Origin: Heterodontus francisci
Lineage: Eukaryota
Assembly: GCF_036365525.1 (NCBI RefSeq)
Contig: NC_090404.1
Span: forward strand, 7,254,001 to 7,318,000
Length of the DNA: 64,000 nucleotides
Direction: 5' to 3'
Within the stretch, counting starts at the first letter, position 1. Each line of letters begins with the position of its first letter. The position numbers and the translations under genes are program-made. The notes under the pieces were generated by a model that was given only the letters and a program-made list of their open reading frames with translations, was not told the origin of the DNA and did not search any database. Shown piece by piece: positions 1,586 through 64,000 of the stretch.

Positions 1586-1977
1586 TCATTGACATGAATT
1601 GACAGTATCCAACAGTGCAAGGGAAATGTTCACAAAACTCGGTTTACCGCTGGATTTATTAACTGTTCTGTTGATGATCTTCAAGGGGATCGCTTCATGT
1701 CCCACCACACAGGAGTATGAAGCGCCGCTGGCCCACTCCTCCGCTGCAATGGATAACAGGCTGTAGATGAAGTAGGAGCTATTGTCGTTCTCCGCCATCA
1801 CCTCGGTGTTCTTGTAGTTACCGGGATTCACCGACTTGTCATTGACGGTCCACTTGACGAAGATCTCTCGGGGGGAGAAACCTCTCACTAAGCAGGTGAG
1901 GGAGAGGAACCTCTGAGCGGAGACATCGTCTGCCGGGGGCAGGAGGACAGATACGGACGGTTCCCGCAGATCTTTAT
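1586..1977 (-). CDS. IGHM: IgM CH4 exon plus secretory tailpiece
   Basis: Acceptor ttctgcag then (N)[63 protein letters not shown]; internal donor G|GTAAA at 1648/1647 for the TM splice; tailpiece has the NIS sequon and penultimate Cys. Confidence 0.96.
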
Positions 1978-2478
1978 CTGCAGAAAAATTAAAATAGATA
2001 TCAATGAACTGGATAATTCCACAGACAATGTAACCGTTGGTTAGATGTGAGAGAAATGTGATTTGTGCTGAATTTTAAAGGTTTCCCTTTCCCCTCTGCG
2101 GCCTGTCCTGTTTTCCAGCCCGGAGCAGAGGCGGATGCAATCCCCTTCGCAGAGAACTTAAAGGATTAGACTGGAAAATTACATAGAAGTAAAAAGCACA
2201 GGAACAGGTCATTTAGCCCAGCTAGCCTGTGCTGGTGTTTATGCCACCCACGAACCTCCTCCCACCTCACTTCATCTCTTTCTAAACCTTTCTCCCTCAT
2301 CTACTTATCTAGCTTCCCCGTAATTGCATCACCTCTGGTTCCAGAGCGTTTCGTTTGCAGAATTACAATTAAATTATCAGAATAATCCATGAGAACACTT
2401 AACAGGACGAATTGTTCCTTGTACAAACACCGGAAATAAGCACAACCTCTCACTTATTGTTTCAATCTCACCGCTCAC

Positions 2479-2787
2479 TTTTTTCCTTGTGGATGAAATC
2501 TCTGAGAGGAGTCGGCAGATCCTGATGGCTCACCACACAGTAGAAATCAACCCCACTCAGCCAGGATTGTGCCGAGATGTCTACGGTGCTGATCACACTG
2601 TCGGAATCCTCTCCGGGTTGCACGGCAATCTCAGATTTCAAAGGCTTCTGTTCTTGTGTCCAGGACACGTTGACACCATAAGGAGCATTAGACACGACGC
2701 AGGTTAAGGTCACCGTCGCCTCCAGTAAGACCTGTTCTATTGATGGTGGCAGTAGCTTAATTACTGGATCATTGCAGGAACAAGGAA
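2479..2787 (-). CDS. IGHM: IgM CH3 exon
   Basis: 309 nt, phase 1-1, ttttacag..A|gtgag; (V)[52 protein letters not shown], a C1-set domain. Confidence 0.96.
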
Positions 2788-3351
2788 CTGTAAAACAGAA
2801 ATGGCAATAAAACAAAGATTCATCTTCAGAATCAGACACCAATATTCAGCCTTCACTGTCTCTAGGAGAATAAATCAACTTCGAGACATCGACCTCAGGC
2901 TGTTGCTTTATTAATATCGTTTATTGGAAGGACAACAACCTGAAAAAGCTTCCGGGAGATTCTGTCACATATACTGTGTACTTGCACCCTAAAAAGCCTA
3001 TAATGGGCTTTGAAGCAAGTACCCAGAGTAAAAATCGAATAATTGCGGGAGAAATTGTGTTACGCACTGAATAATGTTCTTCCCGAAATCCCTTCGGAGC
3101 AAGCTCGAAGGGCCGTATGGCCTACTCCTGTTCCTAATTCGGATGTTCGTTTGTTAGTATTTCCGCCCGTCTATCAGTCCTTGCACCGGATCACATCTCC
3201 TCTAAATATAATGGCTCTGACACCCACGAGCTCTTTATCTAATTCACACTGGCTCATAACGAGAGTCAAATGAAATCCCGAATTTTAGGCCCAACAGGAA
3301 ACAAACTTAATTTTCTGGCACCTTGTCACGGTATTTGGGAAGAGGAAAATA

Positions 3352-3692
3352 TTTAGATTTTAGATTTAGAGATACAGCACTGAAACAGGCCCTTCGGCCC
3401 ACCGAGTCTGTGCCGACCATTAACCACCCATTTATACTAATCCTACACTAATCCCATATTCCTGCCATTTCCTCACCTGTCCCTATATTCCCCTCCCACC
3501 TACCTATACTAGGGGAAATTTATAATAGCCAATTTACCTATCAACCTGCAAGTCTTTTGGCTTGTGGGAGGAAACCGGAGCACCCGGAGAAAACCCACGC
3601 AGACACAGGGAGAACTTGCAAACTCCACACAGGCAGTACCCAGAATTGAACCCGGGTCGCTGGAGTTGTGAGGCTGCGGTGCTAACCACTGC
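3352..3692 (-). mobile_element. tRNA-derived V-SINE (HE1-like)
   Basis: GCAGTGGTTAGCAC..GGTTCAATTC head, V-domain TGCGTGGGTTTTCTCCGGGTGCTCCGGTTTCCTCCCACA, CR1-like 3' end. Confidence 0.85.
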
Positions 3693-4544
3693 ATCTGAAG
3701 GAACCAATCGGAGGAGGGGTGAAAAACCGGGAAAATGCACTTCTGAGGAATCGCTTTGAGGTGCAGAATAACTTACAATAACGGTATGAGGCAGTTTTCT
3801 TATATCTGTCATGAGTCAGAACGCCTCATATGTCAGTCTGCAGTCAGAAGGCGATCTGACAAGAGGGCAATAATAGAAACATAGGAAAAAGCGTAGGTCA
3901 TTCAGCCCCTCCAGCCTGTTCTGCCATTCAAATAGGCAATGGCTGACCTGCATCTTAATCCCGTCTGCCCATATGCGATCCTTAATAGTCTTGCTTTGCA
4001 TAAATCTATCAATCTCAACATTAAAATTTCCAATTGATGCCAAACTTCAAGAGCGAGTTGAGGGAGAGAATACCAGATCACCGATAGCCACTGCATAAAT
4101 GTTAGCTTCCTGATATCATCCCTGAATAACCTTGGTCTCATTTGAAAGTTATGCCCCCTTGCTCTCCAGTCCCTCACCAGAGGAAATATTTTTCTCCATC
4201 GACTCCATCAATTGCAGTAAACATCTTAAACACCTCAATTAGATCCCCCTTCAATCCTGAAAGCAATGCCAGATTGGTCTGTGAAATCTGTCCTCTTAAT
4301 TTAACCCGTTCAGCCGCGCTACAATTCAAGTCAGTTTCTGTTGCACCACTCCCACGGCCAATAGATTCCTCCTGAACTCCGGAGTTCTGAATTGAACACA
4401 GTTTTCGAAATCGATGCTCTTTCTAGCGCTTGATCCCGAGGCTGTAACCAGGAAACGTCCAGCCACTTATTGCCGCTCTGAATATAATCAGCCAACTCAA
4501 GATAAACCTGATATCAAGGCCACCTCATTCACTATGTGACATCA

Positions 4545-6520
4545 ATGAGATGTAAGACTGAGGATTGGGAGTGTTTTAGAAAGCAGCAAAGGACAACCAA
4601 AAAGTTGATAAAAAGGGGAAAAAATAGAATTTGAGAGTAAACTAGCCATCAATATAAAAATAGTTTGGAAGATCTTTTATAAGTACATAAAAAGGAAAAG
4701 AGAAGCCAAAGTAGACGTTGGTCCCTTAGAGGCAGAGACAGGAGAAATCATCATGGGGAATGAGGAAATGGCAGAGGCATTGAACAAATATTTTGTGTCT
4801 GTCTTCACAGTAGAAGACACAAGTTCCATACCAGAAACAGGCAGTAACCTAGCGGCTAAAAAGAGTGAGAAAATTAAGGATATTGATATCAGCCGAGAAA
4901 AAGTATTGGAGAAACTTGACAGAGTAAAATCTGACAAGTTCCCAGGACCTGATGGCTTACATCCTGGGGTTCTAAAAGAGATAACTGCAGAGATAGTGGA
5001 TGTGATGGCTATGACTTTCCAGAATTCCTTAGATTCAGGAATGGTCCCATCAGCCTGGATGTTATGGCAAATGTTATGCCGCTTTTCAAGAAAGGAGGTA
5101 GAGAGAAAACAAGGAACTACAATCCAGTTAGCCTGACGTCAGTCGTTGGAAAGATGCTGGAAACTATTATTAAAGAAGTCTTGACATTACACTTGGAAAA
5201 GCATAGTATGATTAGAACAAGTCAGCGTGGTGTTACTAAAGGGAGATACTGTTTAACAAATGTATTAGAGATTTCTGAGGATGTAACTAGTAGGGCAGAT
5301 AAAGGGGAACGTGTAGATGCAGTGTACCTGGACTTTCAAAATGCATTCAGTAAGGTGCCACATAAAAGAATAATAGGCAAGGTCAGGGCACATGGTGCTG
5401 GAGGTAGTATATCAGCGCGGACAAAGGATTGGTTAACAGACAGGAAGCAGAGAGTGGGCATAAATGAGGCATTTTTAAGTTGGAAGGCAGTGAATAGTGG
5501 GGTGCCGCAAGGATCAGTGCTGGTGTCTCAGCTATTTACACTCTATATTAATGACTTGGAAGAAAAGACAGAGAGTAATGTATCTAAGTTTGCTGATGAT
5601 ACAAAGTTCAGTGGAAAGGTAAGCTGTGGGGAGGATATAAAGAGAGGCTGCAAAGAGATATAGACAGGTTAAGTGACTGGGCAACAAGTTGGCAAATGGA
5701 GTATTATATCGGGAGTTCTGAAATTGTTCACTTTGGTCGTAAAAATAGAAAAGCCAAATATTTTGGAAGGAGTGAAAATGGTAAGTGTTAATGTTCCAAG
5801 AGACTTGGGGGTACTCGTGCAAGGAACACACAAAGTTACCATACAAGTGCATCCGTCCATTAGGAAGGTAAATGGCATGTTGGCCTTTTGTGCAAGGAGA
5901 TTGGAGTACAGGAATAAAGAAGTCTTACCAAAATTGTACAGGGCTTTGGTGAGATCGCAAATGGAATACTGCGTGCAGTTTTGGCCTTCACATTGAAGAA
6001 AGGATGTCCTTTCACTTGAGGCAGTGCTGCGAAGATTTACTAAATTGGCCGCTTGTCCGGTGGGCTTGTCCGGTGATGAGAGACTGAGTAAATTGGGCCT
6101 ATATTCTCTGGCGTTTAGAAGAATGAAAGGCAATCTAATTGAGACACACGAGATTCTGAAAGGGCTTGATAGGGTAGAAGCTGAGAGATTGTTCCCATTG
6201 GTCAGGCAATCATAAACACGGGGAAACAGCCTCAGGATAAGGAGCCAATAATTCAGGACTGAGATGAGAAGAAATTACTGCACTCAAAGAATTGCGAATC
6301 TTTGGAATTCTCCACCACAGAGGGTTGTGGATGCTCCATCATTGAATACATTTAAGGCTGGCATAGATAGATGTTTGGCCTCGCGGGTAATCAAGGGATA
6401 TGGGGAGCGGGCAGGAAAGTGGAATTGAAGCCCAAGAACAGCCATGATCGTACTGAATGGCGAAGCAGGCTCGATGGGCCATATGGTCTACTTCTGATCC
6501 TATTTCTTGTGTTCTTGTAT
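4545..6520 (+). mobile_element. CR1-clade LINE ORF2 (RT) remnant in the CH2-CH3 intron
   Basis: KFPGPDGLHP, NYNPVSLTSVVGK, YLDFQNAF, SGVPQGSVL, FADDTK, MEYCVQFW; ttcttgtg tail. Confidence 0.92.
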
Positions 6521-6734
6521 CAAAGCAGAGGGAACCATTATTTGGTGATGTAATAACATGTTGAACCGTGAGCAAACCTAATTCAGCACTCACAGCGGAA
6601 CAAAGCAAAATAAAACCTACATGATGGTAAATTAGAAATTATTCTGTGATTTGTACTAATTCCAATAATTTCCTGCCTTTGATATTCATCATAGAACAGA
6701 ATGATCTGGAGCTTTCTCCATTTGTGTCTCTTAC

Positions 6735-7052
6735 CCTGAGATCCGGTGATGTTTCGGCTTTGGGTGACCGCTTGATGGGAGACCTGGCAGGTATAGACCG
6801 TGTTGGTGAACCATTCCCCAGCGGGGACTGTCAGCCGACTGGTCGCTGAGAAGTTTCCGTTCACTTCACAGGCGGGAGAGGTGACGAAGCCCGAATCCAT
6901 GGATTGTCCATCCTTCAACCAACTCACGGTTATTGACTCTGGATGGAAATCGATGATTGAACACAAGACAGTTGCAAATCTGCTGCTTGTGATTTCTTCA
7001 CTGGAAGTCTGGGTGAGGAGAACAGTTGGATGGACGATGTCGCCTTGACAAT
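6735..7052 (-). CDS. IGHM: IgM CH2 exon
   Basis: 318 nt, phase 1-1, cttgaag..G|gtaag; (D)[46 protein letters not shown]. Confidence 0.96.
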
Positions 7053-7255
7053 CTTCAAGAAAAACATGTTAGACATTTCTAGAAGAAATTAATAACTAAT
7101 GCAAACTGTTCTTACATTTTAACAGATGTCAAGCAGACACTAACTGGAATCTCCAGGAATTAGAACAGAGCACAGTGCTCTAAATGTGATATAGCCAAAG
7201 CTCTACAAAAGATTATTATAGCTTTTGTGTTTTTCACAGTTTCCACAACACTAAC

Positions 7256-7552
7256 CTGGAATTTCCTTGATCCAGACTGACTCTCCGCGTCGAACCTCGC
7301 AGTAGATTTTGCTGCTTCCCACCTCTGATTCGGTGATGGTTAACTGGCTGCTCAGGGTGTAGGTTCCCTTCTTGTTCAGCACTGACGGGTAAGTCTTCAG
7401 TCCAGTGGTGATCGTCTCTTGATCTTTCTTCCAGGAAACGCTGGTGATTTGGGGGATGTAGTCCATCGCCAAACAGCCGTAGGCAACGGAGCCACCGGTG
7501 TTGGGTTGTTCACAGGAGCACAGACCATAAAGTGTTGGGGGAGACGGTGTCG
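7256..7552 (-). CDS. IGHM: IgM CH1 exon
   Basis: 297 nt, phase 1-1, tttcccag..G|gttag; (A)[53 protein letters not shown]. Confidence 0.96.
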
Positions 7553-8291
7553 CTGGGAAACAATGGCAGATTGAACAAGTTAGACTCTGTGATTCTTGCT
7601 TATTAAGTAACCAGACACATCGGAATTTAACTCCAGCTAGAAACTGATTCCAATATTTTCCGATTAAAACCTTCATCCGCATTTCAGCTTCATTTAGATC
7701 CATCGTTTGGTGATAATCGCCTGTCGGTCCCCTGGTTAGGAAAACACCTCTCTTTCAGGACCTGTCACATTACAAAATTAAGAGCCTTTTGAAGTCATCT
7801 CAATAAAGTACCCTCCATTGGACTGATCTGGAAGAGGAGATTCCCCACTATTTCAGCTAGTACTTATTTCTAAACCAACAGCACCTTGCCAAAAAAAAAG
7901 CACTCGGCATTTATTAATTGCAGTTTTTGGAAATTTACTCTCTGCAAATTGACTGCTGGGTTTCCCCACCCCTCCACATACCACCACCAACCACCCACCC
8001 CACCCCTCCACCCCACGCCCACCCCCACCTCTCCCCACCCCCAAATAGCGGCTACTCTTAAAAAGAGGCATCGCAATGTGTGCTTATAAAACGAGTTTAT
8101 AACCCGAAACTTGACTCCCAGGCAAAGTCCTTTCATTATTTCCCCATAAAAAAACCTACAACAAATCCTAGCATGTACATGACCCAGGATTATAAAATAA
8201 TAGAAATGATAGCAGAGAAATAGGCCATTCGGTCCATCAAGCCTGTGAAAGATCACTCCAGCGATCCCGCTGACCTTCCAATTACTAATTT

Positions 8292-16104: not shown

Positions 16105-16152
16105 CTGCAGTCACAGTCACCATGGTCCCTTGTCCCCAGTAGTCCATTGCGT
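16105..16152 (-). CDS. IGHJ: JH segment, cluster A (AMDYWGQGTMVTVTA)
   Basis: WGxG motif, donor G|GTAAG, preceded by a 23-RSS. Confidence 0.97.
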
Positions 16153-16191
16153 CACAGTGTTACATTCCCTGGGCTGGGTCACACAATAACT
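16153..16191 (-). promoter_or_regulatory. JH 23-RSS
   Basis: AGTTATTGT - 23 nt - CACTGTG. Confidence 0.95.
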
Positions 16192-16504
16192 GGCTCTGCA
16201 CAGAATAGAGAGAAATCCATCATTATTTTAAATATCCACAGCCCAGAGGCAAAATAAAATCTTGATGGTTCTTTGTAAAATTATAACTGCGTTAATGATT
16301 CTTTTCACTCTTTATAATTTTCCCTGATGTTTTATATTTCACACAGTAACATATCAGCAATTATTGAAATCACCAACTGATGAATGTTTATCCATAATAA
16401 ACCATGCTAGGAGGACAGTGCTGCACACAAATAGAACTTCACTGTATATATCGTTGGATTGTTAAAGCGAGCACTGACCCAGACTCATCAATTAGTGCTG
16501 AGGG

Positions 16505-16573
16505 AGTTTTTGTATTGACAGTAACTGCTGTGCCACCCAGTATATCACAGTGAACCACATTGTGTAAAATACT
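16505..16573 (-). other. D2 segment (coding 16533-16545, ATATACTGGGTGG) with 12/12 RSS
   Basis: 5' AGTATTTTA-12-CACTGTG; 3' CACAGCA-12-ACAAAAACT. Confidence 0.93.
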
Positions 16574-16886: not shown

Positions 16887-16967
16887 GGTTTTTGTATGAG
16901 GAATTCGCTCTGTACAGCACCGTGACCCAGTGCTGTACCCACAGTGACACGAACCTGCACAAATACT
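16887..16967 (-). other. D1 segment (coding 16925-16939, GGTACAGCACTGGGT) with 12/22 RSS
   Basis: 5' AGTATTTGT-12-CACTGTG; 3' CACGGTG-22-ACAAAAACC. Confidence 0.94.
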
Positions 16968-17351: not shown

Positions 17352-17390
17352 TGTTATTGTACGGGTCCAGCCCTGGTTCTTCTCATTGTG
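17352..17390 (-). promoter_or_regulatory. VH 23-RSS
   Basis: CACAATG - 23 nt - ACAATAACA directly after YYCARD. Confidence 0.93.
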
Positions 17391-17695
17391 ATCTCTGGCA
17401 CAGTAATAAATGGCGGTGTCTTCGGTCTTCAGTTTCTTCATGTCCAAAGCGAAGATGTTTTTTGAAGTGTCTTTGGACGCAGTAAATCGATCTTTAATCT
17501 CTGGGGCGTAAGCATTGTTAGATGAACTATAGTAGCTAACCAGCAACTCCAGCCCCTGTCCGGGAACCTGTCGGATCCAGTACATCCTGTAGCTGCTAAG
17601 AGTGAACCCGCTGGTTTTACAGGTCAGTCTCAGGGAGCCTCCTGGTTTCCCGGTCTCTGCCTCTGACTGAGTCAACACGACATCCGAATGGACAC
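17391..17695 (-). CDS. IGHV: VH exon, cluster A (open frame)
   Basis: (R)[62 protein letters not shown]; both Cys and the core Trp present; acceptor tttacag. Confidence 0.97.
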
Positions 17696-17801
17696 CTGTA
17701 AAAAATATTTAAAAACCCGAGGATTAATCCTGGTGAAATTATTCCTGACTCTGTAACATTCCAGAGAGAGACTAACACTGAGACGGTAACAGTCTACTCA
17801 C

Positions 17802-17847
17802 GGGATAAGAAAACCAGCAACAGACTGAGAGAAATCGCCGACCTCAT
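17802..17847 (-). CDS. IGHV: VH leader exon, cluster A (MRSAISLSLLLVFLS)
   Basis: ATG at 17847, 46 nt, hydrophobic signal peptide, donor C|GTGAGT. Confidence 0.95.
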
Positions 17848-34340: not shown

Positions 34341-34584
34341 TGACAGATGTTCTCGCCTGGGTAACGGAATGGTCTGTGTGAGTTGTCTTTCTCACACAAG
34401 AGCACGCAACAGAATGGGTTGTGAAAAATTGTTCTTGTTATCAGATGATTGGCAATGTTATTGCATTTTGAATAAAGCGAAATTGAATAAAATACTGAAA
34501 AACACTCGGTTGACATAATCACTTATGCCGGTGCAAATGCATTGGAAGAATTAAGAATTATGTGTTCGAGGCAAACTGACTATA

Positions 34585-34950
34585 CAACACCAACACCAGC
34601 CCCCACACCCCCGTCAACATCCACATATGCACACACCACACACACACATATACTCCACACACATTGCCACCCACACAGCACACACCCATACCCACACACA
34701 AACACACATCATTCTCCCCACACACACAGTCACTCACAACTCCACCCCACACATACAGCCACTCACCACCCCACCCCCCCCCCCACACACACACAAACAT
34801 ATACCTACCCACACACAAACACACATGATTCTCCCCACACACACAGTCACTCACAACTCCACCCCACACATACAGCCACTCACCACCCCACTCCCCCCAC
34901 ACACACAAACATATACCTCATCACACACACACGCACAGACACACACACAT
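34585..34950 (+). repeat. CA/C-rich low-complexity tract with an internal direct repeat of about 115 bp
   Basis: tacccacacacaaacacac..ttctccccacacacacagtcactcacaactccaccccac occurs twice. Confidence 0.85.
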
Positions 34951-35497
34951 AAAACATTTTGTGTGAGCTATTTTCAGTTGCAGCTCTGAACCAGATGAGA
35001 GAGATAATCGTCTGGGCATTAGGACCCTATGGCAGCTCATCTGGTGGTGCTGTGAGGTCACGGTTCCAGACTCTGTCCAGTCGAAGCAGTGGGTCAGGGG
35101 AAGGTTATATCGAAAATCCTGCAGGAAAAAAAAACTGGAACATTAAAAAACAGTCAGCAATGGTCACAGTACAACATAAGTATGAATTAGCAAACCTTAA
35201 CACAACAGAGTTTGTCAGTAAGTAGTGTAAAGTTCAGTGCACTATTACTCAACTTCAGTCCTGTCCCTCAACCCCAGTTCATCTCTGGGAGATTGTTACA
35301 AGATTCAGCCCATCCTTTCAACACAAATATTACCCATAAAATACCGGAGCAATTAGAAATTGCACACAACTGTCTTCCAACCAAAAATGATTAAATCATC
35401 ATACACAAATGTATGTCTTTATTTAATATTAATATATATGATTCTCACTGTCTACCTACCTATCTATCTAGCTATTTATCTAGCTGCCTATCTATCT

Positions 35498-46912: not shown

Positions 46913-48615
46913 TTACAGTCTCTTGTGAACTCGCTGGTGTGTTCGCAGGTGGGATGACTGAGTGAACCCCTTCCCACACACAAAGCAGGTGAATGGCCTC
47001 TCCCCAGTGTGAATTCGCTGGTGATTCAGTAGGTTGGATAAATGAGTGAATCCCTTCCCACACATGGAGCAGGTGAACGGCCTCTCCCGAGTGTGAATTC
47101 GTTGGTGTGTCAGCAGGTTGGATGACTGAGTGAATTTTGTATCACAGACGGAGCAGGTGAAGGGCCTCTCCCTGGTGTGAACTCGCTGTTGATTTAACAG
47201 GTTGGATGAACGCGTGAATCCCTTCCCACAAATCGAGCAGGTAAATGGCCTCTCCTGAGTGTCAACCTGCTGGTGTGTCAAAAGATTGCATGAACGGGTG
47301 AATCCCTTCCCACACACAGAGCTCATGAATGGTCTATGCCCCGTGTGAAGTTGCTGATGTATCAGAAGGCTGGATGAATTCATGAATCCCTTCACACACA
47401 GAGAGCAAGTGAAAGGTCTTTCCCCAGTCAATGCACTGGAACACTCTGACTCGGGTTTGTGTGTGTGAGTCGGTGCTTTTCCAGTCACACTGATGTTTGA
47501 AATCTTTTCCCACAGACAGAACAAACAAACATTTCTCCTTCCACATTCAAAGGCCGATGACATTCAGACTAGATGAATTGAGTGACTGTCAGATCTTCAC
47601 CTGAAGCTTGGCTTGAGTTTCCAGTCTGAAAATAGTAGTATATATAAATGATTTGGAGGAAAATTTAGCTGGTCTGATTAGTAAGTTTGCGGACGACACA
47701 AAGGTTGGTGGAGTTGCAGATAATGATGAGGATTGTCAGAGGATACAGCAGGATATAGATCGGTTGGAGACTTGGGCGGAGCTTTGGCAGATGGAGTTTA
47801 ATCCGGACAAATGTGAGGTAATGCATTTTGGAAGGTCTAATGCAGGTGGGAGGTATACAGTAAATGGCAGAACCCTTAGGAGTATTGACAGGCAGAGAGA
47901 TATGGGCGTACAGGTCCACGGGTCACTGAAAGTGGCAACGCAGGTGGATAAGGTAGTGAAGAAGGCATTTGGCATGCTTGCCTTCATCGGCCGGGGCACG
48001 GAGTATAAAAATTGGCAAGTCATGTTGCAGCTGTACAGAACCTTAGTCAGGCCACACTTAGAATATTGCGTGCAATTCTGGTCGCCACACTACCAGAAGG
48101 ACGTGGAGGCTTTGGAGAGGGTACAGAGGAGTTTTACCAGGATGTTTCCAGGTCTAGAGGGCATTAGCTATGAGGAGAGGTTGGAAAAACTGGGATTGTT
48201 TTCACTGGAACGACGGAGGTGGAGGGGCGACATGACAGAGGTTTACAAAGTTATGAGCGGCATGGACAGAGTGGATCGTCAGAAGCTTTTTCCCAGGGTG
48301 GAAGAGTCAGTTACTAGGGGACATAGGTTTAAGGTGAGAGGGGATGTGCGAGTCAAGTTCTTTACACAGAGTGTGGTGAGTGACTGGAACGTGTTGCCAG
48401 GGGAGGTGGTGGAAGCAGGTACCATAGAGACATTTAAGAGGCATTTTGACAAATACATGAATAGGATCGGAATAGAGGGATATGGGCACCGGAATTCCTG
48501 AAGGTGTTAGTTTCGGCAGGCATCAAGATCGGCGCAGGCTTGGAGGGCCGAATGGCCTGTTCCTGTGCTGTACTGTTCTTTGTTATTTTTGTTCAAATGC
48601 TCCTCTTCTAATACC
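46913..48615 (-). pseudogene. Kruppel-type C2H2 zinc-finger gene, probably a pseudogene; last exon interrupted by a CR1 LINE
   Basis: Six finger repeats with TGERPF-type linkers in ORF 46913-47563 (fingers 2 and 3 lack zinc ligands); an upstream finger in another frame has stops; acceptor ttttacag|GG at 48615 is separated from the fingers by the LINE. Confidence 0.8.
47638..48592 (+). mobile_element. Young 5'-truncated CR1 LINE inside the zinc-finger exon
   Basis: Uninterrupted 282-aa ORF 47653-48501 ([17 protein letters not shown]); ttctttg tail. Confidence 0.93.
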
Positions 48616-51944: not shown

Positions 51945-53670
51945 GTGAGTGGAGCCGGAAGACATAGTTGAGGTTTTAAATGATGACTTTTCATCTGTGT
52001 TCACCATGGAGAAGGACGATTAGGTGTAGAGATCAGGGTGGGGGATTGCGATATACTTGAACATATTAGCATTGAAAGGGAGGAAGTATTAGCTGCTTAG
52101 CGAGCTTCAAAATGGATAAATCCCCAGGCCCAGATGAGATGTATCCCAGGCTCTTATGTGAGGCAAGGGAGGAGATAGCAGGGGCTCTGACACAAATTTT
52201 CAAATTCTCTCTCGCCACAGAAGAGGTACCTGAGGACTGGAGGACAGCGAATATGGGACCATTATTCAAGAAGGGTAGCAGGGATAAACTAGGTAATTAC
52301 AGGCTCGGGAGTCTAACATCAGTGGCAGGGAAACTATTGGAAAAAATTCTGAACGACAGGATTAATCTCCACTTGGAGAGGCAGGAATAAATCAGGGATA
52401 GTAAGCAAGGCTTTGTCAAGGGGAGATCGTGTCTAACAAACTTAATTGAATTTTTCGAGGAGGTGACGAGATGTGCAGATGAGGGGAAAGCAGTTTATGT
52501 AGTCTACATGGACTTCAGTAAGGCTTTTGCTAAGGTCCCGCATGAGAGATTAGTTAAAAAGGTAAGAGCCCATTGAATCCGGGGCAATTTGAAAAATTGG
52601 ATCCAAGATTGGCTTCCTGGCAACAGGCAGAGGGTGATGGTCGAGGGTTGCTTTTACGATTGGAAGCCTGTGACCAGTGCTGTACCGCAGGCATCGGTGA
52701 TGAGACCCTTGCTGTTTGTAGTGTACGTTAATGATTTAGATGTGAATGCAGGAGGTATGATCAGTAACTTCGCAGATGACACAAAAATTGGTGGTGTCAG
52801 AAATAGTGAGAAAAGGCTTAGATTGCAGGACGATATAGATGGGCAGAGCAGTAGCAAATGGAATTTAATCCTGAGAAGTGTGAGATGATGCATTTTGGGA
52901 GGGCTGATAAGGCAAGGGAATATACAATGGATGGTAGGACCCTAGGAAATACAGGGAGTCAGAGGGATCTTGGTGTATTGTCCATAAATCACTGAAGGCA
53001 GCACCACAAGTAGATAAGATGGTTAGGAAGGCATATGTGATATTTGCCTTTATCAGCCGAGACATATAATATAAGAGCAGGGAAGTTATGATGGACCTGT
53101 ATAAAACGCTAGTTGGGCCACAGCTGGAGTACTGTGCACAGTTCTGGGCACCACACTACAGGAAGGATGTGATTGCACTGGAGAGGGTGCAGAGGAGATT
53201 CACCAGAATGTTGCCTGGGCTGGAGCACTTCAGCTATGAAGAGATACTGGATCGGATAAGTTAGTTTCCTTAGAGCAGATAAGGTTGAGGGGGGACCTGA
53301 TTGAGGCATATAAAATTATGAGGGGCATTGATAGGATAGATGGGAAGAAACTTTTTTCCCTTAGCGGAGGGGTCAATAACCAGGGGGCACAGATTAAAGG
53401 TATGAGTCATGAGGATTTGAGGGGATTTGAGGAAATAGTTTTTCACCCAGAGAATGGTTGGAATCTGGAGCACACTGCCTGAAGGGGTGGTAGAGGCAGG
53501 AACCCTCACAACTTTTACGAAGTATTTCGACGAACACTGGAAGTGCCATAGCATACAAGGCTACGGGCCAAGTGCTACAAAAAAGGATTAGAATAGATAG
53601 GTGCTTGATGGCCGGCACAGACACGATGGGCTGAAGGGCCTGCTTCTGTGCTGTATTATTCTATGACTCT
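51945..53670 (+). mobile_element. CR1 LINE ORF2 remnant
   Basis: DKSPGPDEMYPRLL, NYRLGSLTSVAGKLLE, FADDTKIGG; attctatgactcta tail. Confidence 0.92.
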
Positions 53671-59392: not shown

Positions 59393-61631
59393 ATACATTT
59401 TTCAAAAATTCATGTAGGGCAGTGGAAAAATGTATCTACTCGTTTGCTACATGTCTGCTGTGGTTGAAGTAATTCGGGTGAGTGCTTTGTTGTTCGTGAA
59501 AGGACCACATGTTCAGAAATATTGCAATAGTCCTTTCTCAACCCAGTCATAGTATCCCTCTGAGACGAAAATTCGCCATCAGCAGAGAAGGAACATCTGC
59601 ACCACAGGGATACCTAAGGTTTCTCTTTGCGAATTCAGCTCGTTAATTCCGGATAACCTAGGAATTCAAAATGATCTAGAAAATCAGGAAGGACTGAAGG
59701 CGTCAGACTGATACAAATGACATAAAGGGGCCGGTTCAGGTTAGGAATAATAGATCAGAAAGATGAGACAGCATCTTCCAGGCCCATCTCTCCATCTATC
59801 CATTCATTCTCCCATCTATGAATCCATCCATCAATCAATCTGTTCATCGGTCCTTTAAACAAAACGTTCAGACCTCCAACTATCCATGCATTCCAGCATC
59901 GCTGCATCTGTCCCTCTATCCGTGCAAGTCAGTGTATTTATCTATTTCAGAAGGCATCCTCTCTCTGATGCCCTCTCTGTCTGTATACGTGTTTGTCTGT
60001 CTATCTATCTATCTGCATATCTGTTGCAATGTTATGATGTGCTGACAGATCCTCCAGTGCACTGTTGCAACTAACAGGGTGTCTAGAGTTTGGATGTATT
60101 TCATTTCCTGAGAGATGGCAACAGTTCACAGAGTTTAACAACTGATAAAAAAAATTGACTGCAGTATTGTTGCTGGGTAGATTTGTTTATGAATTGGCCT
60201 CATTCACAATGTTAACAGTTTGAAGTTGGCTTGCAGCCAAGCGGTCAGTAAAGAGGAAACAGATCTTTGATTTAATGCACAGAATATCCAGATGCTTCCT
60301 GTAAATAATATTGGGTATTCGAGGCTCCCTGACAGTAGTTAGCTGGGTTGCTGCCAAATACTGTGTGGGGCAGATTAGCGTGAATAGAATGGACAAAAAT
60401 GGAATTTAAACATTTAAACATTAACTTAATCAGCAGCGCTCTTTAAAAAAATGCATTTTACATGATATCACATCTAAAGAATGATCTTAGGTAAATGCAG
60501 TGCTCACATCACGATATAATGGGAGCTCAACATAATAAATTGACCCAAATGTCAATTAAATATGATTCTAGATAATTAAGAACATTTATTTCGTACTGCA
60601 TGAAGTCCTAGAGAGAGATTTTAATAACCCCACATTGATATAAGTGGGACTAGCATAATAAATAAATAGATAGAATTGCCTTGAATCCGCTGCATTTCCT
60701 TGACTTTTCTCACAGAGGTGCGAATACATTCAAACTAAAGACTCCTTTATTACTGATAACAGCTGCATAACGTACAGTTTACTTTCTGATGATTTCGATT
60801 GTCAAACTAGCCTTCTCGTAGCCAGGCTACTATTGGATAGAGAAATGCCCTGTTTGTGATCCGTTTCCACAGTAAATATTCTTGTGATATTCTGTAGCAT
60901 AGCGTTGAGTCTTGATAACTGCGTTTCTGATACAAAAGTATGTTGCACAGTCTGTCGCTCTTACAGTTATCTGCAATGATTTGGGTGCAGGGGGATAGAT
61001 TTGCTGATCGACCTATCGGTTCTGATTCACTAGTTCCTGTTTTTCAAAAGCTGATCTGAATTTTACATGTCACTCCTTCATTATCAGGCAAGTCAACTTA
61101 TTTTACAGGTAATTTTCAAATGGCTGGCTTAGGGTCATAGAATCAAGAGCAATTCGAGAAATACACACAGAGAGAGAAAGACTTGTGTAATGTGAAGTGT
61201 TTCTATTCACTCTGGTCTTTTGTAGTGTAACTGCAGTCATTCACGCTGCAAATCGAATCACTTCTCTAATATCCCGCATTTTCTGCATAAAATTATTTAA
61301 AAAGAAAACATTATCGGGGATACTTTATTGCTATAGATCGAAGGGTTGGATAGCAAGAGACAGAGCAACGAGCAGTCACTTTTGACGCCATTAATATAAT
61401 TCAATCTGAAGCTTTGACATCCTTAGTGTAGTCTTGACGAAATAAAAGGGTTTAATTCACAGGCCACAATGCAATTATTTATTACTGAACGCATTCTCAA
61501 CTGCAATATTTCCATTTAGTAACAAGTAACAGTTTGCATTCAAACCATACAGTCAAATACCTATCCCGAGAAAGAGATAAAACGTTCACATTTAATAATA
61601 ACCCAGTCTAATGATATGAATCCATTCTTTT

Positions 61632-61730
61632 GGTGATGTGAAAAGTGGGACGTGGATGCAGTCAAGGCCTCGGTCAGGGAATCGATAGGCGGCGCCTGGA
61701 ACCTCGCCCCCTTCTGCCGGGTATTTAAAT
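61632..61730 (+). promoter_or_regulatory. VH promoter B
   Basis: GGTGATGTGA at 61632-61641 and TATTTAAAT at 61722-61730, homologous to promoter A. Confidence 0.65.
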
Positions 61731-61820
61731 GCCATTCACTATCACTGCAATACAACAGTCCTGGAGCCAGTTTGCTCAGTGAGTTCTTGGCAGAACCATT
61801 TTCACCGAATTGCCAGAAGG

Positions 61821-61866
61821 ATGAGCTCGGCGATTTCTCTCAGTCTGTTACTGGTTTTCTTATCCC
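61821..61866 (+). pseudogene. IGHV: VH leader exon, cluster B (MSSAISLSLLLVFLS)
   Basis: ATG at 61821, 46 nt, donor GTGAGT; intact, but splices to a V exon with a stop. Confidence 0.93.
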
Positions 61867-61993
61867 GTGAGTAAGTTTTATTGTCCGTTTCTCTCACTGT
61901 TACTGTCTCAGTGTTAGTCTCTCTCTGGAATGTTACAGTGTCAGGAATTCTTTCACCAGGATTAATCCTCAGGGTTTTTGATATTATTTACAG

Positions 61994-62324
61994 GTGTCCA
62001 TTCGGATGTCGTGTTGACTCAGCCAGAGGCAGAGACCGGGAAACCTGGAGGCTCCCTGAGACTGACCTGTAAAACCAGTGGATTCAATCTTGGCAACACC
62101 CGGATGTACTGGATATGACAGGTTCCCGGGCAGGGGCTGGAGTGGTTGGTTCACTACGATGCTTCATCCAGCAATAGTTACGCCCCAGAGATTAAGGATC
62201 GATTTACTGCGTCCAAAGACACTTCAAATAATATCTTCGCTTTGGCCATGAAGAACCTGAAGACCGAAGGCACCGCCATCTATTACTGTGCAAGAAACAT
62301 TACTACATTGGGTACACTGAGTGG
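61994..62324 (+). pseudogene. IGHV: Pre-joined V-D1-D2 segment of cluster B with in-frame stop
   Basis: [47 protein letters not shown]; TGA at 62116-62118; no V RSS; D1-like TACTACATTGGGT and D2-like ACTGAGTGG fused to V. Confidence 0.94.
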
Positions 62325-62352
62325 CACAGCAGTTACTGTCAATACAAAAACT
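62325..62352 (+). promoter_or_regulatory. D2 3' 12-RSS of cluster B
   Basis: CACAGCA-GTTACTGTCAAT-ACAAAAACT, identical to the cluster A D2 3' RSS. Confidence 0.95.
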
Positions 62353-62657
62353 CCCTCAGCGCTAATTGAAGAGTCTGGGTCAGTGCTTGCTTTTACAATC
62401 CAACTATATATACAGTGAATTTCTATTTGTGTCCAGCACTGTCCTACTAGACGGTTTATTATGGATAAACTGATGAATTATTCATTCATCAGTTGGTGAT
62501 TTCAATAATTGCTGATATGTTGCTGAGTGAAATATAAAACATCAGGATAATGTACCAACAGTGAAAAGAATCATTAGCGCAGTTAGAATTTACAATTTTA
62601 ATCTGGGATGTGGATGTTTAAAATAATGAGGGCTTTATCTCCATTCTGTGCAGAGCC

Positions 62658-62696
62658 AGTTATTGTGTGACCCTGCCCAGGGAATGTAACACTGTG
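62658..62696 (+). promoter_or_regulatory. JH 23-RSS of cluster B
   Basis: AGTTATTGT - 23 nt - CACTGTG. Confidence 0.95.
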
Positions 62697-62744
62697 ACAC
62701 CATGGACTACTGGGGACAAGGGACCATGGTGACGGTGACTGCAG
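62697..62744 (+). CDS. IGHJ: JH segment, cluster B (TMDYWGQGTMVTVTA)
   Basis: WGxG motif, donor G|GTAAG. Confidence 0.96.
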
Positions 62745-64000
62745 GTAAGGAGAAAGCTCTAAAAAAAAAGCCCTCATTCAGTAACTGTTTTGTTTGTGTT
62801 TTATTTTATATTTCTGTCTATTTTAATGATGCATTGGTTCACTGAAATGTGGATTCGGTGGATTCTGTATTGAGATCTGTTGCAATGTTTTCTGTGATTC
62901 TGCTGCAAAGGGATGAAAGATTTTAATGGCTTCTCCAAATCGGTGTTGTTGAGGGTTTCAGTTCCTGATTGATGTGATTTGGTGTACATTTGCTGATGTG
63001 ACTGTGTGTTTGGGCGACTTTAAATATCTAATTGCTGTTAAACCTTATGACGTTTCTACATTGTTTAATCTCGATGACATCTTGCTGCTGCAGGTTTTCC
63101 GAACGAACACAAACAATAAGTTTGAAATATGTTTCAAATAAGTTTATAGGCTGAAAGTTTCAGAGGTCAAAAATAGCCTTACTATATTTTCATCTTTTAC
63201 TGTTTGTGGTAATTTAAAAATTTTCATCTATCAATCTACTGCTCACGAATGCTCATATGTGACACAATACTTTTGATGTAATTAAGTACTGCATAAATAA
63301 CAAGTTTGCTGCTTTAGTCAGATTTACATGAATATAACCTCATTTATTATAATGCAGTGATATGAGCCAATATCAATTAAAATGCTATAGCATCAATATT
63401 AATTTATGAAACATGTTCTTTGTACCAGTAATTCTGCTGCCATTGTTTTATATATCTCATAATTCAGAGGCAGGCGGACTCGGCGGATTCTGCATTGAGA
63501 TTTTTTTTTTTTGCAGTTTTGTATTTGATTCTGCTGCAAGTGTTTGTGGAATTAAGCTGCTTCTCCATGAAAAGTACTGAGGCGGGATTCAGCCCCTCAG
63601 TGATGTGAGTTGGGTTTGACCTGCTGAGGAGAGTGTGTGTCTGTGTTCCAAAGGAAAATTTGTGAAGCTGGCGTTTCTGCTTTGTGACATTGAGCGGCTG
63701 TCGGATTTCTAATCGAATGGAGACATTTTACCTGTTCAAAACGAAAGGCAATTTTATCAGGAAAACTGCCAGGTTTCAGAAATGAAAAAAAAACGCTTTA
63801 AGATTTTTCAAGGCATTTTTTAACTTTAATAACAGGTTTATCTATTAAACCATGGTTTGCGACGCTCTTTCAGTACGTGAAATGTTATTGCAAATACAAA
63901 CTGCATACGCAGCAAGTTTGCAGATTGGAGAGTGAAATGAATGCAATTCAAATAATTATAATGCGACAATATCTCCACATATAAACCAAATATGCTTTAA

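What the first reader, a model, noticed from the sequence alone, without database searches (positions are those of the whole stretch)
61994..62352. Pre-joined VDD-J IgM cluster with a RAG-type junction frozen in the genome
Seen: in cluster A, V-D1 and D1-D2 are separated by 451 and 379 bp carrying four RSS. In cluster B both intervals are cleanly absent and the sequence reads TGT GCA AGA AAC | AT | TACTACATTGGGT | AC | ACTGAGTGG | CACAGCA-12-ACAAAAACT. This parses as the V end, 2 non-templated-looking nt, a 5'-trimmed D1, AC (the palindromic P-addition expected after ..GGGT, or a D2 variant overlapping D1 by one base) and a 5'-trimmed D2. The leader intron, D2-J spacer and flanks are retained, so it is not a retrocopy. 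The junction is open ([12 protein letters not shown]) and contains an N-I-T sequon. Known: germline-joined VDD-J genes exist in horn shark and are attributed to RAG activity in germ cells. Inference: this is one such heritable event, next to an unrearranged relative that shows what was excised.
Basis: partly seen in the sequence, partly recalled or inferred. Interest (0 to 1): 0.8.

Follow-up and report, generated by a model that had tools for sequence, protein, structure and literature searches.

The report
Germline-joined VDD-J shark IgM pseudogene
One shark antibody (IgM) gene cluster here has its V, D1 and D2 pieces already fused in the assembled genome, a state known in horn shark since 1988, and this copy has a premature stop codon in its V exon, so it is most likely a dead gene.

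Summary
Cluster A (minus strand) is a canonical V-23 | 12-D1-22 | 12-D2-12 | 23-J IgM cluster with V-D1 and D1-D2 intervals of 451 and 379 bp. In cluster B (plus strand) both intervals and all four RSS are gone. V runs through a 29-nt D-like junction into an intact D2 12-RSS, a 372-bp D2-J spacer, an intact J 23-RSS and J. The leader intron and flanks are kept, so it is not a retrocopy.

There is an in-frame TGA in FR2 (62116-62118, CGA in cluster A), and two conserved aspartates are replaced (ALDM to ALAM, EDTA to EGTA). The open junction therefore does not make an open gene.

The N/P parse cannot be resolved. The junction length equals V end + D1 + D2 minus 2 nt, and the D1 match is only 10/15 (P about 0.01).

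Germline status rests on the chromosome-scale assembly, compatible but non-bridging contigs from a second DNA sample, pseudogene decay and precedent. Partly joined H-chain clusters were discovered in horned shark.

Other germline RAG footprints were already noted elsewhere in this genome by this scan. This is an ordinary new member of a known kind.

The parts
61722..61730 (+). TATA-like TATTTAAAT upstream of cluster B, within a block conserved with cluster A
   Evidence: the surrounding ~60 nt are near-identical in A and B. Promoter function is inferred only.
61821..61866 (+). Cluster B leader exon (ATG at 61821)
   Evidence: 44/46 identical to the cluster A leader. A 61866->61994 GT..AG splice is seen in RNA run X5, though possibly from paralogues.
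61867..61993 (+). Leader intron, retained (127 nt)
   Evidence: 90.6% identical to A's 106-nt intron, with a 21-nt indel. This excludes a processed retrocopy.
61994..62295 (+). V-derived part of the fused exon, up to Cys-Ala-Arg
   Evidence: V-set domain, 88.9% nt identity to the A V exon.
62116..62118 (+). In-frame TGA stop in FR2 (WI*Q), where cluster A has CGA (Arg); a CpG transition
   Evidence: No laid DNA contig of sample S1 shows another letter here, but none is shown to span it.
62296..62324 (+). V-D1-D2 junction AACATTACTACATTGGGTACACTGAGTGG. The D1-like part is about 62299-62313. The D2-derived part is 62314-62324.
   Evidence: D1 match 10/15 (P about 0.01). The D2 match is 10/13 and abuts the D2 3' RSS.
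62325..62352 (+). Intact D2 3' 12-RSS (CACAGCA-12-ACAAAAACT), identical to cluster A's
62353..62657 (+). D2-J intersegment DNA, retained
   Evidence: the D2-RSS-to-J-RSS stretch is 92.2% identical to A's.
62658..62696 (+). Intact J 23-RSS (AGTTATTGT-23-CACTGTG)
62697..62744 (+). J segment (..MDYWGQGTMVTVTA), with a GT donor at 62745. The C exons lie beyond the window end.
17391..17847 (-). Cluster A leader exon (17847-17802), intron (17801-17696) and open V exon (17695-17391)
17352..17390 (-). Cluster A V 23-RSS (CACAATG-23-ACAATAACA)
16887..16967 (-). Cluster A D1 (16939-16925, GGTACAGCACTGGGT) with its 5' 12-RSS and 3' 22-RSS
16505..16573 (-). Cluster A D2 (16545-16533, ATATACTGGGTGG) with 12-RSS on both sides
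16105..16191 (-). Cluster A J 23-RSS (16191-16153) and J (16152-16105)
1586..7703 (-). Cluster A C-mu exons: CH1 within 7251-7703, CH2 within 6583-6966, CH3 within 2468-2842, CH4 plus secretory tail within 1586-1888
   Evidence: four C1-set domains. CH4 ends ...[20 protein letters not shown].

Best explanation
Cluster B is an inherited, partially pre-rearranged IgM heavy-chain cluster of a horn-shark-type genome. In an ancestral germ cell, or in an ancestral cluster later duplicated, the V 23-RSS was joined to the D1 5' 12-RSS and the D1 3' 22/23-RSS to the D2 5' 12-RSS by deletional V(D)J-type (RAG) recombination. This removed about 0.85 kb and all four signals and left one V-D1-D2 exon. The D2 3' 12-RSS and the J 23-RSS were untouched, so the locus could still make the last D2-to-J join in lymphocytes. 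The V part has since acquired a premature stop (CGA to TGA in FR2) and lost two conserved FR3 aspartates, so today it cannot encode a heavy chain. It is a germline-joined pseudogene. Shown: the structure, the clean loss of the signals, the retained intron, spacer and RSS, and the stop codon. Inferred: RAG as the agent, the germ-cell setting, and non-function.
For: Structure: searches show the exact 451- and 379-bp intervals with four RSS in A, absent in B, and no heptamer or nonamer remnant in the junction. One search shows no copy of the excised intervals elsewhere in the window. Not a retrocopy: the leader intron, D2-J spacer and flanks are retained. D origin of the junction: D2 is anchored on its own RSS, and D1 matches 10/15, P about 0.01. 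Pseudogene: TGA at 62116-62118, D84A and D92G at positions conserved in five other shark VH. FR dN/dS between A and B is 0.17, so the decay is late relative to the A/B split. Germline: the locus lies inside a long assembled chromosome piece (one search places other findings millions of bases away on the same piece). DNA runs X1 and X2 of a sample differing from the window at 9 substitutions and 2 indels cover all 30 bins. They show B-specific flank and D2-J contigs at about 40x. No joint is listed, no other letter is listed between 62077 and 62673, and at most one unlisted loose end remains. RNA run X5 holds only 8% of the locus words, which fits framework words shared with paralogues (my inference) rather than expression of B. 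Precedent: horned-shark H-chain clusters are rearranged, partially rearranged or unrearranged in the germline, and expression of the joined ones was not detected (PMC2193156). VD-J clusters are stated in reviews (PMC4279169, PMC5192425, PMC6795676). VDD-J is a frequent RAG intermediate at nurse-shark IgM clusters (PMC2435157). Organism: the best protein hit is HV01_HETFR, whose leader MRSAISLSLLLVFLSR is identical to cluster A's.
Against: No listed read or contig is shown to bridge 62222-62491 in the second sample. That region is covered only by contigs shorter than 88 nt, with a near-hole at 62377-62457, so independent confirmation of the junction and of the stop is indirect. The tissue used for the assembly is unknown. 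The D1 assignment is statistically modest. RAG involvement is inferred from the precision of the excision only. The C exons of cluster B lie outside the window, so the completeness of the gene is unknown.
Confidence: 0.82

Rival explanations
1. Somatic rearrangement or assembly artefact. The junction comes from lymphocyte or thymocyte DNA in the sequenced tissue, or from a mis-join of two clusters, and is not inherited.
For: VDD-J is a common partial configuration in nurse-shark thymocytes (PMC2435157). The source tissue of the assembly is unknown. No contig of the second sample is shown to bridge the junction.
Against: Somatic joints are polyclonal and would not form the consensus of a chromosome-scale contig. 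A mis-join would occur at shared sequence and would not create a 29-nt D-like junction. The V carries a stop plus two radical FR changes typical of germline decay. The second sample shows single-copy B flanks and no pair of loose ends expected from an unjoined allele. The species has many inherited joined clusters (PMC2193156).
Confidence: 0.04
2. Germline V-to-D2 join with D1 deleted (true VD-J). The V 23-RSS recombined directly with the D2 5' 12-RSS, and the 18 nt between V and D2 are mostly non-templated.
For: The 12/23 rule allows it. The D1 match is only 10/15, and 1.4% of real 18-mers in the window reach that score. Horn shark D segments are said to vary little between clusters (abstract of PMC2191167), so three mismatches in D1 is a lot.
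Against: The junction length is exactly V end + D1 + D2 minus 2 nt, and the best match is in register with that. Lee et al. saw little evidence of TdT activity in germline joints of shark L-chain genes, so an 18-nt N region would be unusual.
Confidence: 0.1
3. A functional germline-joined gene. The TGA is an assembly error or a private or polymorphic allele, and the cluster makes a restricted-CDR3 heavy chain after D2-J joining, like early-expressed joined genes of nurse shark.
For: Splice sites, the TATA-like box, J and both remaining RSS are intact. The junction is in frame. FR dN/dS of 0.17 shows long purifying selection. Joined genes are used in nurse-shark pups.
Against: No DNA contig of the second sample shows C at 62116. 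All 11 variant places of X1 are accounted for elsewhere. Two further radical changes hit conserved aspartates, including the near-invariant D of EDTA. RNA run X5 lacks most of the locus words. Expression of joined H genes was not detected in horned shark.
Confidence: 0.06

Closest known systems
Germline partially joined (VD-J) IgM heavy-chain clusters of the horned shark, Heterodontus francisci (Kokubu et al. 1988, as cited in PMC2193156)
   Same: Same type of cluster (V-D1-D2-J-Cmu). V and both D are fused, J is separate with its RSS, and the leader intron is kept. It occurs beside unrearranged clusters, there is no evidence of expression, and the organism matches by best hit and leader identity.
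   Different: I could not read the 1988 paper, so I cannot say whether this particular locus was among its clones. Here the chromosomal context is seen (divergent orientation to an intact cluster 44 kb away), and a stop codon shows it is a pseudogene.
Germline-joined NS4 (kappa-type) light-chain genes of nurse shark (Lee et al. 2000, PMC2193156)
   Same: RSS are excised completely. Joints are explained by small deletions, possible P nucleotides and little or no N addition. Some joined copies are pseudogenes.
   Different: Those are single V-J joins whose unjoined relatives are up to 99% identical, which allowed the joint to be reconstructed and dated. Here there are two joins, and the only available relative is 82-92% identical, so the joint cannot be resolved.
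Somatic VDD-J (2R) intermediates in nurse-shark thymocytes and B cells (Malecek et al. 2008, PMC2435157)
   Same: Identical configuration and the same RSS logic. It shows that RAG readily produces VDD-J at such clusters.
   Different: Those are somatic, polyclonal and not inherited. This one stands in the assembled chromosome and has decayed.
Nurse shark IgM1gj (fully VDJ-joined neonatal IgM)
   Same: A germline-recombined IgM heavy-chain gene in a shark.
   Different: IgM1gj is fully joined, open and highly expressed in neonates. Cluster B is only partly joined and carries a stop.

Membership tests
Cartilaginous-fish IgM cluster (V-D1-D2-J-Cmu) | One V, two D and one J with RSS spacers 23 | 12-22/23 | 12-12 | 23, followed by four C-mu exons | tested here: met
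   Cluster A: RSS; four C1-set exons, secretory tail. Cluster B keeps V, the D2 3' 12-RSS, the J 23-RSS and J. Its C exons are outside the window.
Germline-joined VD-J / VDD-J IgM cluster | V and D coding sequence contiguous, with intersegment DNA and the corresponding RSS absent | tested here: met
   451- and 379-bp intervals and four RSS are present in A and absent in B. No RSS remnant is left in the junction.
Germline-joined VD-J / VDD-J IgM cluster | Genomic (not processed) structure: leader intron and D-J intersegment retained, J unjoined with its RSS | tested here: met
Germline-joined VD-J / VDD-J IgM cluster | Junction derived from the cluster's D1 and D2 | tested here: inconclusive
   The D2 part is anchored on its RSS (10/13). 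D1 matches 10/15, P about 0.01. A zero-addition model gives 20/29. No close unjoined relative was available.
Germline-joined VD-J / VDD-J IgM cluster | Present in non-lymphoid or germline DNA and inherited | tested here: inconclusive
   It stands in the assembled chromosome. Second-sample DNA contigs are compatible but not shown to bridge the junction. The capture run of another individual was uninformative.
Functional germline-joined Ig gene (IgM1gj-like) | Open reading frame through V(D)(J), and expression | tested here: not met
   TGA at 62116-62118. There is no sign of B-specific transcripts in RNA run X5.
RAG-mediated joint | Breaks exactly at heptamer borders, obeying the 12/23 rule, with trimming and P/N processing | tested here: inconclusive
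   The excision is compatible with cuts at the heptamer borders, and both joins obey 12/23. P/N nucleotides cannot be told apart from D divergence. The enzyme itself is not testable here.

The most novel reading that the evidence does not exclude
The joint is young or still polymorphic in the population, and a near-identical unjoined paralogue survives elsewhere in the IgM array. That would allow the first base-by-base reconstruction of a germline two-step (V-D1, D1-D2) RAG product in a heavy-chain cluster. Lee et al. said this could not be done for horned-shark H genes because the junctions were too varied. The dead VDD-J locus might also still complete D2-J joining in lymphocytes.
Probability: 0.1. 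Interest if true: 0.5.

Novelty: new member of a known kind. Interest (0 to 1): 0.22.

Why it matters
Germline-joined shark Ig genes are the classic evidence that the V(D)J recombinase has acted in germ cells. This locus adds one mapped example, with its chromosomal context and an intact paralogue 44 kb away, in the shark lineage where such genes were first found. It does not change the picture. The configuration is known, this copy is a pseudogene, and the junction cannot be dissected with the relative at hand. Its practical value is for annotation: it should be flagged as a VDD-J pseudogene and not as a functional V. It is also one data point for a genome-wide census of germline RAG footprints, several of which this scan has already noted in the same genome.

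Tried and rejected
- **Reinsertion of the excised DNA.** BLAST of cluster A's V-D1 and D1-D2 intervals against the window found nothing.
- **Signal joints.** One back-to-back heptamer-like palindrome at 53130 lies in the EYCAQFW motif of a LINE reverse-transcriptase ORF and has no nonamers. Rejected.
- **Bacterial promoter and terminator scan.** Irrelevant to a vertebrate gene.
- **The look-up of encoding contigs.** I wanted the catshark contig of P0004 and further clusters.
- **Kokubu 1988 (PMC454840).** Not held.
- **Hinds-Frey 1993 and Anderson 1995.** Held as abstract and references only.
- **The search of earlier findings.** By sequence and by a long word list it was blank.
- **Read laying.** The capture run X11 put only 8 reads on the J region, and these came from a paralogue. 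The VDJ joints seen in RNA run X5 have only 25-29 nt on the V side. They belong to paralogous functional clusters and are not evidence that cluster B is used.
- **A slip of my own.** In my notes I first placed the stop at 62126-62128 and took contig 62122-62221 as confirming it. The stop is at 62116-62118 and that contig does not cover it (corrected).
- **Rules.** I took no contig for human. I built and searched no spliced or joined model; exons were scanned separately.

Full report
**1. What is in the sequence**

The window holds two IgM heavy-chain clusters in divergent orientation, about 44 kb apart. The DNA between them is rich in retroelements.

Cluster A runs on the minus strand. Its parts are:
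- leader exon 17847-17802, a 106-nt intron, and an open V exon 17695-17391;
- V 23-RSS, CACAATG-23-ACAATAACA;
- D1, GGTACAGCACTGGGT (16939-16925), between a 12-RSS and a 22-RSS;
- D2, ATATACTGGGTGG (16545-16533), between two 12-RSS;
- J 23-RSS and J (16152-16105);
- four C1-set exons ending in an IgM secretory tail.

This is the canonical shark cluster.

Cluster B runs on the plus strand. It has an ATG at 61821, leader exon 61821-61866, a 127-nt intron, and a V exon starting at 61994.

**2. Check of the observation**

- The V-D1 and D1-D2 intervals of cluster A are exactly 451 and 379 bp and hold four RSS.
- In cluster B, homology to A stops at 62295 and resumes at 62313.
- The text between reads TGT GCA AGA AAC ATT ACT ACA TTG GGT ACA CTG AGT GG. 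It is followed at once by CACAGCA-12-ACAAAAACT (62325-62352), which is identical to A's D2 3' RSS.
- No heptamer or nonamer remnant is left in the junction.
- Nothing like the two missing intervals occurs elsewhere in the window.
- The leader intron (90.6% identical to A's), the D2-J interval (372 vs 380 bp, 92.2%), the J 23-RSS (62658-62696) and J (62697-62744) are retained. A processed retrocopy is therefore excluded.

**3.

Translated in the V frame, the exon reads ...[16 protein letters not shown].... The stop is TGA at 62116-62118. Cluster A has CGA there, so this is a CpG transition.

Two further changes derived in B hit conserved framework positions. ALDM becomes ALAM, and EDTA becomes EGTA. 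The aspartate of EDTA is present in cluster A and in all five other shark VH sequences aligned, including HV01_HETFR.

The junction is locally open ([13 protein letters not shown]), but the gene is not. Framework dN/dS between A and B is 0.17, against 1.64 in the CDRs. Both lineages were therefore under selection for most of their separate history, and B's decay is comparatively late.

**4. The junction**

The last 11 nt (ACACTGAGTGG) abut the D2 RSS and match D2 at 9 of 11 (10/13 over the full D2). They are therefore D2.

The preceding ATTACTACATTGGGT matches D1 at 10/15. A score that good arises in 0.9% of random 18-mers and 1.4% of real 18-mers. D1 is likely but not proven.

The 29 nt after GCAAGA have exactly the length of the untrimmed V end (GAT) + D1 (15) + D2 (13) minus 2 nt. 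With no additions, this model gives 20/29 identity, and 7 of the 10 mismatches in the 35-nt comparison (which adds the last six V bases) are transitions. The binomial P is 0.003 to 0.08 for assumed divergences of 11 to 19%.

Four of the mismatches cluster at the V-D1 border (GATGG vs AACAT). This may be a small trimmed-and-filled patch.

'AC' is equally the start of a D2 variant trimmed by 2 nt. Cluster A is only 82-92% identical to B, which is too far to decide.

**5. Germline or somatic?**

I used the single reads call on 61000-63400.

*DNA runs X1 and X2 (one sample, about 40x).*
- They differ from the window at 9 substitutions and 2 indels at full depth. They therefore represent another haplotype or individual.
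- They cover all 30 bins.
- They give B-specific contigs for the 5' flank (61305-61729), the D2-J spacer (62492-62672, no differences) and the J-C intron.
- They show no joint and no other letter between 62077 and 62673.
- Six of the seven partly laid contigs have loose ends elsewhere. The two loose ends expected from an unjoined allele are therefore not both present.

*Limits of that evidence.*
- No contig is shown to bridge 62222-62491. Pieces there are shorter than 88 nt, and 62377-62457 is nearly empty.
- Support for the junction and for the TGA in that sample is therefore indirect.
- The capture run of another individual laid only paralogous J reads.

*RNA run X5.* It shows IgM V and J at huge depth and many VDJ joints with diverse CDR3. 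Each has only 25-29 nt on the V side, so they come from paralogous clusters. X5 holds just 8% of the locus words. I read that as framework words shared with paralogues rather than expression of B.

*Conclusion.* I take the join as germline with about 0.9 confidence. The grounds are:
- the locus sits in a chromosome-scale assembly (one search places other findings millions of bases away on the same piece);
- a polyclonal somatic joint cannot become an assembly consensus;
- the V exon shows germline-type decay;
- the phenomenon is established in this kind of shark.

**6. Organism and precedent**

The best protein hit of B's V is HV01_HETFR from Heterodontus francisci (83% identity). Its leader, MRSAISLSLLLVFLSR, is identical to cluster A's. 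Earlier follow-up notes of this scan also call the genome horn shark. I tested this only to that extent.

The literature states the following.
[quoted passage not shown] These are 'rearranged, partially rearranged, or nonrearranged', and expression of the joined ones was not detected (PMC2193156; it cites Kokubu et al. 1988, which I could not read).
- Reviews list VD-J, VD-DJ and VDJ clusters (PMC5192425, PMC4279169, PMC6795676).
- VDD-J is a frequent RAG product at nurse-shark IgM clusters in thymocytes (PMC2435157).

A catshark protein, scyTo_0022151 (P0004), ends ...[35 protein letters not shown] is the translation of the D2 3' RSS in another frame (one search gives [13 protein letters not shown] for cluster B). 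That annotated gene is therefore probably a VD(D)-J cluster too.

**7. Mechanism**

*Shown:* two deletions whose ends coincide with RSS borders and obey the 12/23 rule (V-23 with 12-D1, D1-22/23 with 12-D2). The D2 12-RSS and J 23-RSS are left intact.

*Inferred:* RAG-mediated recombination in a germ-line cell, either at this locus or in an ancestral cluster later duplicated. It was followed by inheritance and, later, by loss of function through CGA to TGA and two radical replacements. The locus could still undergo D2-J joining in lymphocytes, but any product would be truncated.

**8. Verdict**

This is a new, mapped member of a kind known since 1988, apparently in the same species, and a pseudogene. 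Interest is low.

This scan has already reported other germline RAG footprints elsewhere in this genome: a joined IgM1gj-like gene, an inverted D-J join, and joined NAR-TCR exons.

Noticed in passing
window 62325-62697 vs 16159-16532 (minus): The D2-J intersegment stretch is 92.2% identical between clusters A and B, against 82.3% for the 5' flank and 81.2% for the J-C intron (Fisher p = 2e-7 and 4e-5). This suggests constraint on, or gene conversion of, the D2-J spacer.
   Followed up: partly
protein P0004 (Scyliorhinus torazame scyTo_0022151): Its C-terminal [14 protein letters not shown] is a read-through of a D2 3' RSS only about 8 codons after YYCTRD. The catshark assembly therefore probably also holds a VD(D)-J germline-joined cluster. 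P0002 (Chiloscyllium) instead reads through a V 23-RSS, like cluster A's ORF.
   Followed up: partly
window 62377-62457: In DNA runs X1 and X2 this 80-nt stretch of the D2-J spacer has almost no laid contig (depth about 8 vs about 40), with a cluster-A-like loose end at 62451. The cause is unknown (allelic difference, filter or paralogue tangle).
   Followed up: no
window 4753-6133: LINE-type reverse-transcriptase ORFs are inserted in the Cmu2-Cmu3 intron of cluster A. Similar RT fragments fill much of 20-60 kb between the clusters.
   Followed up: no
window 46913-47563 (minus): A 216-aa ORF with at least four tandem C2H2 zinc fingers (Pfam zf-C2H2, E = 1e-33) sits between the two IgM clusters. 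Whether it is a gene or a fragment is unknown.
   Followed up: no
window 61533-61540 vs 18130 region (minus): Cluster B has GTTTGCAT (7/8 of the Ig octamer ATTTGCAT) about 285 bp upstream of its ATG. Cluster A has ACAGCAT at the aligned place. The significance was not examined.
   Followed up: no
RNA run X5 laid on window 62289-62711: Expressed paralogous clusters show very diverse CDR3 inserts containing D1-like GGTACAGCAGTGG and D2-like ATATACTGGATGG. Their V ends read ...GCAAGA followed by GAT, which shows that the usual V end in this family is GCAAGAGAT.
   Followed up: partly
window 34540-34990: Low-complexity CA/TG-rich repeat giving long His/Thr/Pro pseudo-ORFs on both strands.
   Followed up: no
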